Shown here one piece after another: positions 8,165 to 49,835 of a stretch of 64,000 nt of DNA. Source of the stretch: Euprymna scolopes (taxonomy: Eukaryota). Within the stretch, counting starts at the first letter, position 1, and the number at the start of each line of letters is the position of its first letter. The position numbers and the translations under genes are program-made. The notes under the pieces were generated by a model. The model ran no database searches and was not told the origin of the DNA. It saw only the letters and a program-made list of their open reading frames with translations. The stretch lies in assembly GCA_053919585.1 (NCBI GenBank), contig CM132792.1, one strand, 5' to 3'.

Positions 8165-8490
8165 AAATTTTCTGCTATGATTCTGATTATTTGTCCGCAA
8201 GAACCCGTGGCGCAGTGGATAGTGTACTTAGTTAAATTCATTTGTAAAAGTGGCACCTTTTGGAAGTTGAAGGTCTTGATGCGAGCGACCCAAAATACAA
8301 TTGCTAATTACTTTGGACTTCTATCCTTTTATGTCCAGAGTTAGACCAAAGGATGTTTGGTTTCGACAAGACACACCTGAAGGAGATCGGTAGTTACATC
8401 GACTGAAACGTTGTGCAAATTACACTCAAAATGGGGACAGTCATTCGAAGAATCCGAATAATACGAATGAACTAAGCTTATAAAATTTTT
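8165..8490 (+). mobile_element. tRNA-headed, hammerhead-tailed SINE-like element (diverged subfamily)
   Basis: Head CCCGTGGCGCAGTGGATAG at 8204. CACAC-CTGAAGG..GAAACGTTGTG at 8372-8415. Tail resembles the 17.3 and 40.7 kb copies. No clear TSD. Confidence 0.6.
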
Positions 8491-16658: not shown

Positions 16659-17303
16659 GCACTTTTTGCTGAACAATAACACAAGCAAATTGCAGTTATA
16701 ACATAATTCAGGTAATACGAATAGAAGATGATCGTTGAGAACTTGCCTAAATGATAAGCATGATCTTTCTAATGTAAAAAGTGGAAAACAGAGAAACAAA
16801 GATACAAAATTAACACCATCATCTTAGAGGCAGATGCACCGAAAGATGTTTATATGATTAATGATTGCAGCTTCTTAAAAGAATTGAAAGAAGAGTGCTA
16901 TTATCTCTTTTGAACATAAAGCCTTTCAGAATCATTCATGAAATTAGAGGTAAGTAATCACGAAGAAATCTTTTTCTCGTTTCTTTTTAGTGTATATGTT
17001 AGTAAAAAATAAACGATGAATAATGAGAAATGTTTTTTAGAAAATGCACCTACTCAATTTACATGTTTCAGAATATACATAATTAGCGGGACCAGCGGAA
17101 ATTCCACGGTGCTTTCTACGCCGATCATGATAAATTATGTTAATAATAATATTCTTTTGAGAATGAATGCCTGCCAGGATCAATACTATCAAAAATAACT
17201 CTTTCTACTTTGGTAAAACTATTTTTTCATTCAGGTTGATGGCTGAAGAAGTGTTTGTTTGCATGGGATTTGAACATATTGTAGTGGGAAACAGTATCAT
17301 GGT

Positions 17304-17689
17304 CAATTTATTTATTGCGGACTATTATCCTCATCTATATTAGTTATTTCACGACGCGCCTCGTAGCGCAATGGATAGAGATGTTAAATCTACGGTTCCA
17401 GGTGAGAATTGTCTGAAGATAGCGGCTTCAATCCTACCCAAAGCCGATCAGAGGCTTACTTGGCCAAATTGTGGTGAGACGACAACAACTATGGATGGCA
17501 GTAATTGCTGAGAATGCAGTTAGGAGATTCGGAGTTCCTATCCCGTCGCGGTTACCACCTGACGAAGGCCAGAGGAATAGTTGGCCCAAACGTCGTGAAA
17601 CAACAATAAAGATGAGGATAATAGTCCGCAATAAATAAATTAATAAATAATACTCATCTCAATAATGAATTCCAATTAAAAACTATATA
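17304..17689 (+). mobile_element. tRNA-headed SINE-like element with Penelope-type hammerhead tail and inverted 5' tail copy
   Basis: TSD AGTATCATGGT (17293-17303 / 17690-17700). Inverted arm 17305-17356; head TCGTAGCGCAATGGATAGAG; CTGACGA-AGGCCA..TGGCC-CAAACGTC at 17559-17594. Confidence 0.85.
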
Positions 17690-18051
17690 AGTATCATGGT
17701 AGTTTATTCCTTAGATGGACGCTATAAGACATCACATTTGTTTCTCGGGGTTTCGCTTGGTCTTTTGTAGAGAGAGAGAGAGAGAAAGAGAGAGAGGGGG
17801 GTCTTTTTTGAGGTTGTAGCCTGGCGAATGTTTGCTGTGACTGTTTTACGGGAGACGAGAGATTGAAGCTCAGTCGTACATATAATGAATATAAGGATAC
17901 AGTAGAGAAAGGTTACTAGCATCTGCTCTACATGAGAGGTGTATAGGGAAGTGAAGAGATGAACCCCGGTAGATTGCGATATCGGTTTAGAACTCTGTCG
18001 GGGTAAGAAATAATGTTCCAAATAGAACCTCATCAGATATGGTGCACTCCA

Positions 18052-40591: not shown

Positions 40592-40667
40592 CGGCTTGAT
40601 CACCGATATGAAATACATTTTATTTGTAAAAACAAATAAAATGTATTTCATATCGGTGATCAAGCCG
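40592..40667. repeat. Perfect 35-bp-arm hairpin
   Basis: CGGCTTGATCACCGATATGAAATACATTTTATTTG-TAAAAA-reverse complement. Confidence 0.95.
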
Positions 40668-40673
40668 TTTCCT

Positions 40674-41144
40674 TAATTTTTATTTTTATTTCGGACTATT
40701 AGTCTCATCTTTATTAGTTGTTGTTTTTGAATCTTTTTATTGGTTCACAACGTTTCGGCCAACTTCCTCTGGCCTTCGTTAGGTCCCGTGGCGCAGTTGA
40801 TAGAGACGTTGAATCTCTACGGTTCCAGATGAACATTGTCTGAAGATAGCGGTTTCAATCCCACCCAAAGCGTGCCAGAGGTAATTGGTCAAAAATGTGG
40901 TGAGACGACAACAACTACGGATGGCAGTGATGGCTGAGAATACAGTTAGGAGATTCGAAGTTCCTAACCGTCGCGGTTACCACCTGACGAAGGCCAGAGG
41001 AAGTTGGCCGAAACGTTGTGAACCAATAAAAAGATCCAAAAACAACAACTAATAAAGATGAGACTAATAGTCCGAAATAAAAATAAAAATTAACATATAA
41101 TGCTCATCTCAAAAAATGAATTCCAATTAAGGAATAATATATAT
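40674..41144 (+). mobile_element. Young tRNA-headed SINE-like element with Penelope-type hammerhead tail and inverted 5' tail copy
   Basis: TSD AAGCCGTTTCCT (40662-40673 / 41145-41156). Inverted arms 40674-40784 / 40982-41092 with 2 mismatches by eye. A-box-like TGGCGCAGTTGA at 40789 and B-box-like GGTTTCAATCCC at 40851. Confidence 0.9.
40980..41021 (+). ncRNA. Minimal type-I hammerhead ribozyme (Penelope-type)
   Basis: CAC-CUGACGA-A-GGCCA..UGGCC-GAAA-CG-UU^GUG. Core intact, palindromic AACGUU at stem III, predicted cleavage after 41017. Confidence 0.8.
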
Positions 41145-42189
41145 AAGCCGTTTCCTCTTTATTTTTTCAACTAGTAGGGTTATTCGGCAATACCCTGGGA
41201 TTGTCACATAAACGAAAAGCTCTAATTCAGCTTACATTCGCTTTCTCTATAACAATTTCCGACCATCATAGCTGGTTGAGTCACAACATCACGTGCACTC
41301 AGTTTTTGCACTTTTTCTTAAATCTAGTTGAAACAACCGTAACGTTGAACACATTTTTCTAATGGCGTCGTAACAATGAAACAATTTTGCTGGTAACGAG
41401 ATAATTACCTTTCTTTTGTAAGCCTCCCGCCTTAGGTCAGCAGATGTGGCCTCTGACCCTATTGAAACTACAATGGCCGATGATCGTTTTCTTCCGGGAG
41501 TACTTAACAGGATTCTTCAACGCCGCAGGCTTCGTGTCGATTTCCGTTGAAAATCAATTAGCTTCTTATGCAAGCCGAAAAGAAAACAAACTCAGGGGAT
41601 TCTAGTCTACTAAAGTTAATTCACGAACATTACAAGTGTTTACATATTTTCAGTTCGATTACACCAGAAAACAGTCCAAAATCTTATTATTCGTTCTCCA
41701 CGATGGCGACCATGATGGAGAGGGGGAGGAGTGGCGTTTCTTAGGTGCGTGTGTTTCTCTCGAGATTCGGCTTCGATCTGATAATTTCGGCCCGGGCATT
41801 CGCTTATATTCCAAGGGTAAAGGTTGGTTGGGGAAATCCGCTCGACCAATCAGGATTCAACACGTTACTCGGGGAATTCCCGAATCCTTTGCGTGTGTGC
41901 AGCTCTGCAAGGCTTGCAAATCTGGGATCAGAACTCAAATTTATTCACACGCTCAGAAGGTTAACACTTTGACCTCTCGCACTCAGAAAGCCAGACATCC
42001 TGAGCACGGGTTCGTCAGGCCAAGAACGAATGTATGATTTCATTCTCACTTTAATCTGACATTTCTTGTCACTTTTCTCAAACAATAAAATATATAAAAT
42101 AAAATACGCATCAAGTGCGCTTGAAAGCCAAATCATAACGTAATATACGGAAAATAAACAAATATTTTACTTGTTTGAAATTTATCACT

Positions 42190-49014: not shown

Positions 49015-49020
<6 letters not shown>

Positions 49021-49835
49021 AAGAAGTGAACCATATTTGGATGTTATAAAATAAATAAGTCGATTAAAAAAGCACGAAATGTAATAAAACCCGAAACGCT
49101 TTTCGTCAGAGAGACTTTTCAAGGATATACGTCTGAAAGAAGGAAAACAAAGGTTTTTTCTGTTTTTCTTTTTTTTTTTTTATAATTGTTGTAATAGTAA
49201 GCGAAAGGGGGTAGAAATGAAAAAAAAACTTAGATGGAACGTGTCCCCTCAAATAGTACCAACTGTGCACAAAGTAGGAGCGAAAACTGATGGCAAGCGC
49301 CTCGAGAACAGACAGGTGAAAGTAAGTGCGTCCTCTGTGCAAAACAGAAAAACACTCCGAAGAGAATGTAGAACCACAGTCCCTTTTTATCTAATAAGTG
49401 TTGTCCAATAGCCGATTCTACTAATTGAGAACCCCTGGAAATAGGCTGTTGATCCCGCTGAAACGAGGTACATGCTTGGTGATTCTAACGTGAAGACGCT
49501 GGATCGTCTTGTCTATATAGACGGCACCACACCGACATTGCAATTTGTAAACAATATTGCTTGACTGTGAGGTAGGCAAGACGTCCTTACGAAAAGAGGG
49601 AAATGCGCACTTCGTAAAAAAGCAATTCGGGGTGATTTCGCCTACTATTACAACAATTATACAAAAACAAAAAAACTTTCTTTTCCTTCTTTCAGACGTA
49701 TATCCTTGAAAAGTCTGTCTGACGAAAAGTGCTTCGGGTTTTATTACATTTCGTGATTTTTTTTTTTATCGGCTTATTTTATAACATCCGAATATTGTTC
49801 ACTTCTTTCTCATCATTTTAAAATTTTACTATTCT
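49015..49835 (+). mobile_element. Penelope-like non-autonomous insertion with about 190-bp inverted arms and a variant hammerhead
   Basis: Arms 49015-49206 / 49636-49813 around a 430-bp spacer; inserted in (TA)n. Confidence 0.75.
49703..49738 (+). ncRNA. Hammerhead ribozyme variant with U3-A8 core (mirror copy on minus strand at 49090-49125)
   Basis: UCC-UUGAAAA-GUC-UGUCU-GAC-GAAA-AGUGCU-UC^GGG. Confidence 0.65.

What the first reader, a model, noticed from the sequence alone, without database searches (positions are those of the whole stretch)
40662..41156. Candidate Penelope-mobilised SINE: tRNA-like Pol III head, minimal hammerhead tail, inverted tail copy, 12-bp TSD
Seen: a 471-bp insertion between AAGCCGTTTCCT repeats. 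It is arranged as [inverted copy of 111 bp of the 3' tail][CCCGTGGCGCAGTTGATAGAG..GGTTTCAATCCC head][non-coding body][CUGACGA..GAAACGUU hammerhead + AT-rich tail]. Known: partial inverted pseudo-LTRs and minimal type-I hammerheads with a palindromic stem III are hallmarks of Penelope-like elements, whereas classical SINEs borrow LINE tails. Schistosome Sm-alpha is a precedent for a tRNA-related SINE with a hammerhead. Inference: this is a Pol III-transcribed non-autonomous retroposon that uses Penelope RT/GIY-YIG machinery. I do not recognise this partnership as well described.
Basis: partly seen in the sequence, partly recalled or inferred. Interest (0 to 1): 0.88.

Follow-up and report, generated by a model that had tools for sequence, protein, structure and literature searches.

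The report
Penelope-dependent hammerhead repeat with tRNA module
This is one young copy of a very abundant non-coding mobile repeat in a large mollusc genome; it carries a piece of an arginine tRNA gene and a minimal hammerhead motif, and it was inserted in the manner of Penelope-like retrotransposons, so it is a real and tidy example of a kind that is already described.

Summary
A 471-bp insert (40674-41144) lies between perfect 12-bp duplications. It has a 112-nt inverted copy of its own tail, a tRNA-like block, a hammerhead motif and an AT-rich tail.

It belongs to a young family (96-99% identity) with thousands of copies in a 5.9-Gb genome. The head derives from the genome's own tRNA-Arg(ACG). 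The hammerhead has every sequence feature of the minimal hammerhead of animal Penelope-like elements (PLEs).

The insertion signature matches an intact, abundant PLE of the same genome:
- duplications of 9-15 bp;
- inverted plus more-than-unit tandem copies inside one duplication pair;
- strictly head-to-head polarity (18 divergent pairs against 0 convergent; the PLE shows 21 against 0);
- a tail ending in (AT)n.

That PLE carries the same hammerhead architecture and the same (AT)n end.

The strict SINE reading is only partly supported. About 60% of heads have a 90-nt leader upstream, and tandem arrays of about 457 bp exist. Short copies begin 2-4 nt before box A, at the foot of a stable hairpin. 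No PLE sharing the tail sequence was found. Pol III transcription and self-cleavage remain untested.

HHR elements riding on PLEs and tRNA-headed HHR SINEs (Sm-alpha) are published. Earlier agents of this scan reached the same class for sister families on other DNA of this genome.

The parts
40662..40673 (.). left target-site duplication AAGCCGTTTCCT
   Evidence: It is identical to 41145-41156. Other copies have different duplications of 9-15 bp.
40674..40784 (-). inverted partial copy of the element's own tail and the 3' part of the hammerhead (unit positions about 292-404)
   Evidence: It is 98% complementary to 40982-41093. Independent insertions carry inverted copies of other lengths, and all of them start at unit 400-409.
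40785..40866 (+). tRNA-Arg(ACG)-derived module, with a box A-like site at 40789-40799 and a box B-like site at 40851-40861
   Evidence: Alignment to the genome's own tRNA-Arg genes (L055, L056) scores 44.5. Shuffles give 21.4 +/- 3.9, and 0 of 1000 reach the observed score. No cloverleaf is found by ARAGORN or Rfam.
40861..40894 (+). degenerate internal duplicate of the hammerhead region
   Evidence: It is 71% identical to 40980-41013, at a spacing of 119 nt (family D2). It is kept in older relatives.
40895..40974 (+). non-coding body
   Evidence: The unit has no ATG ORF above 28 aa. The body is conserved in relatives of 70-91% identity.
40975..41024 (+). minimal type-I hammerhead motif: helix I GGTTACCAC / GTGAACC; CTGACGA; unpaired A at 40991; helix II GGCCA / TGGCC; GAAA; palindromic CG; predicted scissile bond between 41017 and 41018
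   Evidence: The sequence is. The defining features are those listed in PMC4209133. 24 intact copies are present in the DNA held, and the genome has 3,729 matches at up to 2 mismatches. Rfam gives only 14.7 bits.
41025..41144 (+). A-rich tail with a terminal hairpin (ATTCC 41120-41124 pairing with GGAAT 41131-41135) and an (AT)n end (41136-41144)
   Evidence: All copies share this fixed 3' end. The (AT)n run is variable and is extended by up to 50 nt in other copies.
41145..41156 (.). right target-site duplication
17293..17700 (+). older relative of the same superfamily (about 80% identity), with an 11-bp duplication AGTATCATGGT, a shorter inverted tail, and a hammerhead core with G12 changed to C

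Best explanation
The insert is a copy of a non-coding, non-autonomous retroelement. It is copied and inserted by the reverse transcriptase and GIY-YIG endonuclease of Penelope-like elements (PLEs).

The full unit is 454 bp. It consists of a 90-nt leader ending in a cUUCGg hairpin, a block derived from tRNA-Arg(ACG) that keeps box A- and box B-like sites, a body holding a decayed hammerhead duplicate, a PLE-type minimal hammerhead, and an A-rich tail that ends in a small hairpin and (AT)n.

Inferred mechanism: reverse transcription starts at the (AU)n end on a nicked target. It often runs over more than one unit, because the template comes from tandem copies or a circle. A second, inverted copy is made at the other nick. 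One event therefore leaves [inverted partial copy][direct copy] between duplications of 9-15 bp.

The window copy is the short form. Its direct copy stops at the foot of the leader hairpin, and it has a 112-nt inverted tail piece.

Shown here: the anatomy, the copy numbers, the tRNA-Arg origin, and the shared insertion signature and motif architecture with an intact PLE of the same genome. Inferred only: which polymerase makes the RNA, whether the hammerhead cleaves, and which PLE family supplies the enzymes.
For: - Family: many loci at 96-99% identity, with different flanks and a fixed 3' end.
- Counts at up to 2 mismatches: head 8,724; leader-head junction 5,266; hammerhead 3,729.
- One duplication pair of 9-15 bp encloses [inverted copy][partial direct copy](AT)n[full unit] in L009, L010, L017, L022, L026, L028 and L030 (for L030 the full 11-bp duplication comes). 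It encloses [inverted copy][direct copy from unit ~95] in L001-L003, L005, L013 and L024.
- The junctions of L001-L005 all differ, so these are independent events.
- Polarity on contig C1: 18 divergent, 0 convergent and 13 tandem neighbour pairs (spacing 431-465 bp) for the element's hammerhead. The PLE motif gives 21 divergent and 0 convergent pairs.
- PLEs in this genome: 15,395 GIY-YIG candidates. [quoted passage not shown]
- That PLE's tail carries TTGAAGA-A-GCCCG..CGGGC-GAAACGTT and ends in (AT)n. It shares with this element the extra A after position 9, G10.1-C11.1 and GAAACGUU. Helix II and the proximal part of helix I differ by compensatory changes.
- The unit is non-coding.
- It is present in poly(A) RNA libraries of molluscs, and sense reads outnumber antisense reads 3-5 fold.
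Against: - blastn found no tail sequence shared with any of the 22 PLE loci sampled. The leader shows no significant similarity to the PLE 5' end.
- The partner PLE is therefore inferred from motif architecture and insertion signature only.
- Rfam does not recognise the hammerhead above noise.
- 5' ends near the hammerhead lie from 10 nt before to 4 nt after the predicted scissile bond, not on it. They therefore give no proof of cleavage.
Confidence: 0.8

Rival explanations
1. One reading: a classical head-first SINE. Pol III starts at the tRNA-derived head by way of boxes A and B. The head-to-tail RNA of about 360 nt is the template, and PLE enzymes copy it.
For: - The head derives from tRNA-Arg. 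Box A matches the tRNA's at 9 of 11 positions and box B at 9 of 11.
- Of 15 copies whose direct part begins within unit 1-101, 13 begin at unit 94-101.
- Older relatives have the head directly at the junction, with no leader.
- In RNA runs the leader has 5-30% of the depth of the head and body, and sense reads dominate.
- A T6 run lies 18 nt past the insert, at 41162-41167.
Against: - The 5' ends lie only 2-4 nt upstream of box A and inside the tRNA-like acceptor. tRNA-type promoters start 10 nt or more upstream of box A (established knowledge).
- These ends sit exactly at the 3' foot of the GCCC-TTCG-GGGC hairpin, as expected for a reverse-transcriptase stop.
- About 60% of heads carry the 90-nt leader, and arrays of about 457 bp exist.
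- No cloverleaf is detected.
- The lack of TTTT on the sense strand is not significant (P = 0.39).
- The head is not more conserved than the body.
- The RNA depth profile is confounded by oligo-dT priming on the A-rich tail, and no defined read starts were seen.
Confidence: 0.3
2. A retrozyme life cycle. Tandem units are transcribed into multimers, paired hammerheads cut them to 454-nt monomers, a tRNA ligase circularises them, and the PLE reverse transcriptase copies the circle by rolling, which gives more-than-unit inserts.
For: - Head-to-tail arrays with a period of 455-460 bp reach at least 4 units.
- Direct copies of 1.05-1.5 units lie inside one duplication pair.
- 3 of 9 partial direct copies start at unit 318-331, near the predicted scissile bond at 327/328.
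- The model itself is published in PMC7229834 and PMC4209133.
Against: - The starts do not fall on the scissile bond. The PLE's own full copies also start 3-7 nt upstream of it.
- Minimal hammerheads cleave poorly in vitro (PMC4209133).
- Transcripts of tandem genomic copies would give the same products without any circle.
- The one read-laying run showed no clear tail-to-leader back-joints. The tail was skipped as a repeat.
Confidence: 0.25
3. The hammerhead motif is not a working ribozyme here. It is an inherited PLE tail structure that serves, if anything, as a recognition or pause element for the reverse transcriptase.
For: - The dominant, clearly successful PLE has U at position 3 opposite G8 in its consensus: about 30 of the roughly 31 copies of the motif in the held PLE DNA, and 6,404 genome matches. 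This is expected to weaken catalysis.
- Junctions cluster around helix II rather than at the scissile bond.
- The hammerhead is not more conserved than the body between families.
- PLE clades lacking hammerheads proliferate well (PMC8557442).
Against: - The element keeps the canonical C3-G8 and all core bases in most young copies: 24 intact copies against a few variants.
- Helices I and II differ from the PLE's by compensatory changes.
Confidence: 0.35
4. An ordinary LINE-mobilised tRNA SINE, or a satellite amplified at the DNA level.
For: It has a tRNA-derived block, a high copy number and an A-rich tail.
Against: - There is no poly(A) end.
- It has inverted and tandem composites with strict polarity, identical to the PLE's.
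- Flanks are unique and each insertion has its own duplication.
- The only flank-sharing copies, L019, L020 and L027, are one segmental duplication.
Confidence: 0.04

Closest known systems
Minimal hammerheads of metazoan Penelope-like elements (Cervera and De la Pena 2014, PMC4209133)
   Same: It has the CUGANGA and GAAA boxes, an unpaired base between positions 9 and 10.1, G10.1-C11.1, a palindromic 15.2-16.2 pair with no loop 3, a short interrupted helix I and a longer helix II. It lies near the 3' end, occurs as opposite-strand pairs 100-700 bp apart, and has thousands of dispersed copies.
   Different: Here the motif sits in a 454-bp non-coding unit with a tRNA-derived block, not in the flanking repeat of an ORF-bearing PLE.
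Sm-alpha / Sj-alpha of schistosomes (tRNA-derived SINE-like elements with a hammerhead; PMC2770079 and references there)
   Same: A tRNA-derived block is combined with a hammerhead in a short, very abundant non-coding retroposon that is also found in tandem.
   Different: Sm-alpha carries a canonical type-I hammerhead and a tRNA-Gln-like head. This family has the PLE-type minimal motif, a tRNA-Arg head, a 90-nt leader in most copies, and clear PLE-style inverted/tandem inserts.
Animal non-LTR retrozymes (PMC7229834; bioRxiv 10.64898/2026.07.22.740005)
   Same: It is non-coding, forms tandem units of a few hundred bp that each carry a type-I hammerhead, has low GC and duplications longer than 4 bp, and is proposed to depend on PLEs.
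   Different: The described retrozymes carry canonical hammerheads, and no tRNA-derived promoter block is reported for them. Circular RNA is not shown here.
Non-autonomous Chlamys PLEs such as MRC1 (PMC8557442)
   Same: They have pseudo-LTRs and multicopy head-to-tail inserts made by PLE machinery.
   Different: Those share 3' sequence with an autonomous family. No such shared tail was found here.

Membership tests
PLE-type minimal hammerhead (PMC4209133) | Core boxes CUGANGA and GAAA, with C3-G8 | tested here: met
   CTGACGA lies at 40984-40990 and GAAA at 41010-41013. 24 intact copies are present in the DNA held.
PLE-type minimal hammerhead (PMC4209133) | [quoted passage not shown] | tested here: met
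   The unpaired base is A40991. G40992 pairs with C41009.
PLE-type minimal hammerhead (PMC4209133) | A palindromic 15.2-16.2 pair without loop 3, so that helix III forms only in a dimer | tested here: met
   A-C-G-T at 41013-41016 is followed by T17.
PLE-type minimal hammerhead (PMC4209133) | Recognition by curated hammerhead covariance models | tested here: not met
   There is no hit at E <= 10 in 1.2 kb. On 81 nt the only hit is Hammerhead_3 at 14.7 bits, E = 0.62, against a gathering score of 48.5. Minimal motifs lack the helix III hairpin that these models expect.
PLE-type minimal hammerhead (PMC4209133) | Self-cleavage | not testable with these tools
   Junctions near the motif are not on the scissile bond.
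Non-autonomous element mobilised by PLEs | Complex inserts: an inverted 5' partial copy and/or a partial tandem copy (pseudo-LTR) within one variable-length duplication | tested here: met
   Duplications are 9-15 bp.
Non-autonomous element mobilised by PLEs | The same insertion polarity as autonomous PLEs of the same genome | tested here: met
   Divergent against convergent pairs are 18:0 for the element and 21:0 for the PLE.
Non-autonomous element mobilised by PLEs | 3' sequence shared with an autonomous PLE family | tested here: not met
   blastn at word size 7 against 22 PLE loci gives no hit except an embedded copy of the element. Only the hammerhead architecture and the (AT)n end are shared. 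The sample was not exhaustive.
Non-autonomous element mobilised by PLEs | Active autonomous PLEs present in the genome | tested here: met
   There are 15,395 GIY-YIG candidates and many open ORFs of 804-808 aa with RVT_1 and GIY-YIG domains. Copies are 97-99% identical.
tRNA-derived SINE (Pol III) | A tRNA-derived region with A and B boxes | tested here: met
   Alignment to the genome's own tRNA-Arg(ACG) gives z of about 5.9, and 0 of 1000 shuffles reach the observed score. However, no tRNA fold is found.
tRNA-derived SINE (Pol III) | The head forms the 5' end of copies, at or just upstream of tRNA position +1 | tested here: not met
   5,266 of 8,724 heads are preceded by the leader. Leaderless copies start at tRNA position +4 to +6.
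tRNA-derived SINE (Pol III) | Transcription by Pol III | not testable with these tools
   RNA libraries hold the element with a sense bias, but no defined starts were seen.
tRNA-derived SINE (Pol III) | A tail shared with a LINE, or a poly(A) end | tested here: not met
   The tail ends in (AT)n after a hairpin. LINE tails were not searched.
Animal non-LTR retrozyme (PMC7229834) | Tandem units that each carry a type-I hammerhead | tested here: met
   Arrays have a period of 455-460 bp and reach at least 4 units, often mirrored.
Animal non-LTR retrozyme (PMC7229834) | A circular RNA of unit length | not tested
   The single read-laying run skipped the tail as a repeat and gave no clear back-joint.

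The most novel reading that the evidence does not exclude
A Pol III-driven retrozyme. The tRNA-Arg-derived block would be the long-sought promoter of an animal retrozyme. It would transcribe through the arrays, whose units happen to contain no TTTT. Paired minimal hammerheads would cut unit-length RNA, and PLE enzymes would copy it. This would tie Pol III, a ribozyme and PLE machinery together in one 454-nt parasite, and would make the family a tractable model for how PLE-dependent elements are expressed.
Probability: 0.2. Interest if true: 0.6.

Novelty: new member of a known kind. Interest (0 to 1): 0.4.

Why it matters
The element gives a clean, young, high-copy example outside vertebrates and flatworms of a hammerhead-bearing parasite of Penelope-like elements, with its likely helper intact in the same genome. 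The copies preserve the junctions of individual insertion events: the inverted copy always starts about 50 nt short of the 3' end, and breakpoints fall at two hairpins. This makes the family useful for working out how PLE reverse transcription builds its odd tandem/inverted inserts. It could also test whether a tRNA-derived Pol III promoter drives a retrozyme-like element. It does not reveal a new class.

Tried and rejected
1. The 471-bp composite (inverted tail plus head-to-tail) as a unit that is itself copied. Rejected: L001-L005 have different junctions.
2. The leader as a remnant of the PLE 5' end and first codons (an apparent ATGGAAG / TGATCGC match). Rejected: the local alignment score is 9.0, against shuffles of 9.5 +/- 1.6.
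3. Absence of TTTT on the sense strand as a Pol III signature. Not significant: P = 0.39.
4. Unusual RNA structure of the unit. It is only modest: z = -2.56 for the sense strand and -2.18 for the antisense strand.
5. Selective conservation of the head or the hammerhead between families. Not seen: all segments are 50-91% identical, and only the tail is faster.
6. A type-III reading of the hammerhead, with cleavage after GTC at 40972. It rests on a 14.7-bit hit and a 4-bp helix I with a mismatch, and the PLE's motif does not support it.
7. The flanking duplication of about 60 bp in L012 as a giant target-site duplication. It is only about 87% identical, while the element is 98% identical to its family, so it is probably a pre-existing repeat.
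8. A tail-only search to find an ORF-linked tail. It gave only copies of the element, and no more loci could be cut out.
9. 5' ends as proof of self-cleavage. They lie from 10 nt before to 4 nt after the scissile bond.

Full report
OBSERVATION. AAGCCGTTTCCT stands at 40662-40673 and again at 41145-41156, around a 471-bp insert. The first 111 nt of the insert (40674-40784) are the reverse complement of 40982-41093, at 98%. The rest reads as follows:
- CCCGTGGCGCAGTTGATAGAG from 40785;
- GGTTTCAATCC at 40851-40861;
- a non-coding body;
- CTGACGA at 40984-40990;
- a GGCCA/TGGCC stem;
- GAAACGTT at 41010-41017;
- an A-rich tail ending in a small hairpin (41120-41135) and ATATAT.

ARAGORN finds no tRNA. 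Rfam finds no tRNA and no hammerhead at E <= 10 in 1.2 kb. On 81 nt alone Rfam gives only a 14.7-bit Hammerhead_3 match, E = 0.62.

A REAL, YOUNG, ABUNDANT FAMILY. The genome has 5.9 Gb in 925 contigs. RNA runs labelled as mollusc hold the element. The insert recurs at 96-99% identity at many loci, with unrelated flanks and a fixed 3' end. Whole-genome pattern counts at up to 2 mismatches are:
- 8,724 for 36 nt of the head;
- 5,266 for the junction of the head with an upstream leader;
- 3,729 for the hammerhead.

The head count exceeds the hammerhead count, so several sister families share the head. The window holds an older relative at 17293-17700, with an 11-bp duplication and about 80% identity. 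It also holds a third family at 8165-8490 with the same head and hammerhead ends but another body.

THE HEAD IS tRNA-Arg-DERIVED BUT USUALLY NOT TERMINAL. The genome's own tRNA-Arg(ACG) genes (L055, L056) align to the head from tRNA position 1 to the T loop. About 23 nt are inserted after the anticodon. The score is 44.5, shuffles give 21.4 +/- 3.9, and none of 1000 reaches the observed score. The older family is closer to the tRNA in box A.

Longer copies carry 90 nt more upstream of the head. This leader ends in a GCCC-TTCG-GGGC hairpin and is preceded by (AT)n and a further partial copy. About 60% of heads have this leader. Head-to-tail arrays with a period of 455-460 bp and up to at least four units occur, often as mirrored double arrays. 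The full unit is therefore 454 bp (L017:1417-1870) and is non-coding.

Copies without the leader, including the window copy, begin at unit 94-101. That is 2-4 nt before box A and exactly at the 3' foot of the hairpin. Thirteen of the 15 copies whose direct part begins within unit 1-101 begin there. This is too close to box A for a tRNA-type Pol III start. It is where a reverse transcriptase running 3' to 5' would meet the hairpin. A Pol III origin for some transcripts is not excluded.

THE INSERTION SIGNATURE IS THAT OF PENELOPE-LIKE ELEMENTS. In unit coordinates, single events bounded by one duplication of 9-15 bp (mode 11-12) take one of two forms:
- [inverted copy from about 404 down to X][direct copy from Y to 454](AT)n[1-454];
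- [inverted copy][direct copy from about 95 to 454].

The junctions of L001-L005 all differ, so similar-looking copies are independent events. L002 and L003 use a CCTTCG microhomology between the inverted hammerhead and the leader hairpin.

On contig C1, perfect hammerhead matches form 18 divergent neighbour pairs within 1.2 kb, no convergent pair, and 13 tandem pairs at 431-465 bp.

The genome is full of PLEs, with 15,395 GIY-YIG candidates. [quoted passage not shown] It shows the same inverted and partial-tandem arrangement. Its tail motif gives 6,404 matches, with 21 divergent and 0 convergent pairs on C1.

THE HAMMERHEAD. The motif meets every sequence criterion that Cervera and De la Pena list for the minimal hammerhead of animal PLEs:
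- the two core boxes;
- an unpaired base between positions 9 and 10.1 (A40991);
- G10.1-C11.1;
- a palindromic 15.2-16.2 pair with no loop 3, so that helix III can form only between two copies;
- a short interrupted helix I (GGTT-AC-CAC with GTG-AACC);
- a 5-6 bp helix II.

The dominant PLE carries TTGAAGA-A-GCCCG..CGGGC-GAAACGTT about 70 nt before its (AT)n end. The architecture is the same: the same extra A and the same GAAACGUU. Helix II and proximal helix I (CAC/GTG here, CTC/GAG in the PLE) differ by compensatory changes. The PLE has U rather than C at position 3.

I found no evidence of cleavage. Some partial direct copies start at unit 318-331, and PLE copies that follow an inverted copy start 3-7 nt before the predicted scissile bond. 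None starts on the bond. Pausing at the helix II hairpin explains these starts as well as cleavage does.

THE PARTNER. No tail sequence is shared with any of the 22 PLE loci I could fetch. The apparent likeness of the leader to the PLE 5' end is not significant. The partnership therefore rests on the shared insertion signature, the shared hammerhead architecture, a short hairpin before the end, and the (AT)n terminus. It does not rest on a shared tail.

EXPRESSION. Poly(A) and oligo-dT RNA libraries hold the element. In raw single-cell 3' reads, sense reads outnumber antisense reads 3-5 fold. The leader has 5-30% of the depth of the head and body in the RNA runs, and no place where molecules begin or end stands out. 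Oligo-dT priming on the A-rich tail could produce both biases, so these data do not decide the polymerase.

COMPARISON AND NOVELTY. Four precedents are published:
- minimal hammerheads in PLEs, also as dispersed single motifs and opposite-strand pairs (PMC4209133);
- non-autonomous PLEs (PMC8557442);
- animal retrozymes proposed to ride on PLEs (PMC7229834; bioRxiv 10.64898/2026.07.22.740005);
- tRNA-derived SINE-like elements with hammerheads in schistosomes (PMC2770079).

Earlier agents of this scan judged sister families on other pieces of this genome to be new members of the same class, and my tests agree. What is particular here is the combination, in a mollusc, of a tRNA-Arg block with the PLE-type minimal motif, together with very legible insertion junctions.

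VERDICT. The element is a new member of a known kind. The scan found this class before on other DNA of this genome.

Noticed in passing
window 40592-40667: A perfect 36-bp palindrome with a 4-nt loop abuts the insertion and overlaps the left duplication by 6 nt. It gives spurious miRNA-precursor hits in Rfam. About a dozen weak relatives (82-95% over 40-50 nt) exist elsewhere in the genome. It is a small foldback family that is not part of the element.
   Followed up: partly
L046:5410-5534 and L043-L052: The dominant intact PLE (ORF of 804-808 aa) has U at hammerhead position 3, opposite G8, in its consensus (about 30 copies of the motif in the held PLE DNA, and 6,404 genome matches). One copy shows the U3-A8 variant. 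Where a full copy follows an inverted copy, it starts 3-7 nt before the predicted scissile bond. In tandem copies the 71 nt after the bond run straight into the ORF region with no (AT)n between them.
   Followed up: partly
L001-L005, L009, L010, L013, L017, L022, L024, L026, L028, L030 (left ends of the inserts): In at least 14 independent insertions the inverted partial copy starts at unit position 400-409 (TAATTTTTATT...). That is about 50 nt short of the element's 3' end, and it lies directly against the duplication. The PLE's own inverted copies start at its very end. I have no explanation for this.
   Followed up: partly
window 40861-40894 versus 40980-41013: A decayed second copy of the hammerhead region lies directly after the tRNA-derived block, 119 nt upstream of the intact one. 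It is kept in older relatives. This hints that the ancestor was a short tandem hammerhead repeat into which a tRNA-Arg copy was joined.
   Followed up: partly
L012:1430-1500 and 1860-1925: An imperfect duplication of about 60 bp (about 87% identity) flanks one copy. It is too diverged to be a duplication made by this young insertion, so it is probably a pre-existing repeat.
   Followed up: no
L019, L020, L027 (contig C46): Three copies have identical flanks over at least 200 bp. This is one insertion carried in a segmental triplication, not three separate events.
   Followed up: no
L008, L011, L014, L016, L024 (3' ends): The terminal (AT)n run varies from about 4 to about 27 repeats between copies. 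In L011 there is no TA-rich target upstream, so the run may be extended during reverse transcription rather than inherited from the target.
   Followed up: no
L053:1500-1575, L054 (reverse strand, about 1440-1530): These tRNA-Arg(ACG)-like sequences are not called by ARAGORN. They are either decayed tRNA genes or heads of further families.
   Followed up: no
window 49015-49835 and 8165-8490: Two other hammerhead-bearing elements lie in the same window. One has long inverted arms between (TA)n runs. The other has the same head and hammerhead ends as this family but a different body and a changed core (CTGAAGG).
   Followed up: partly
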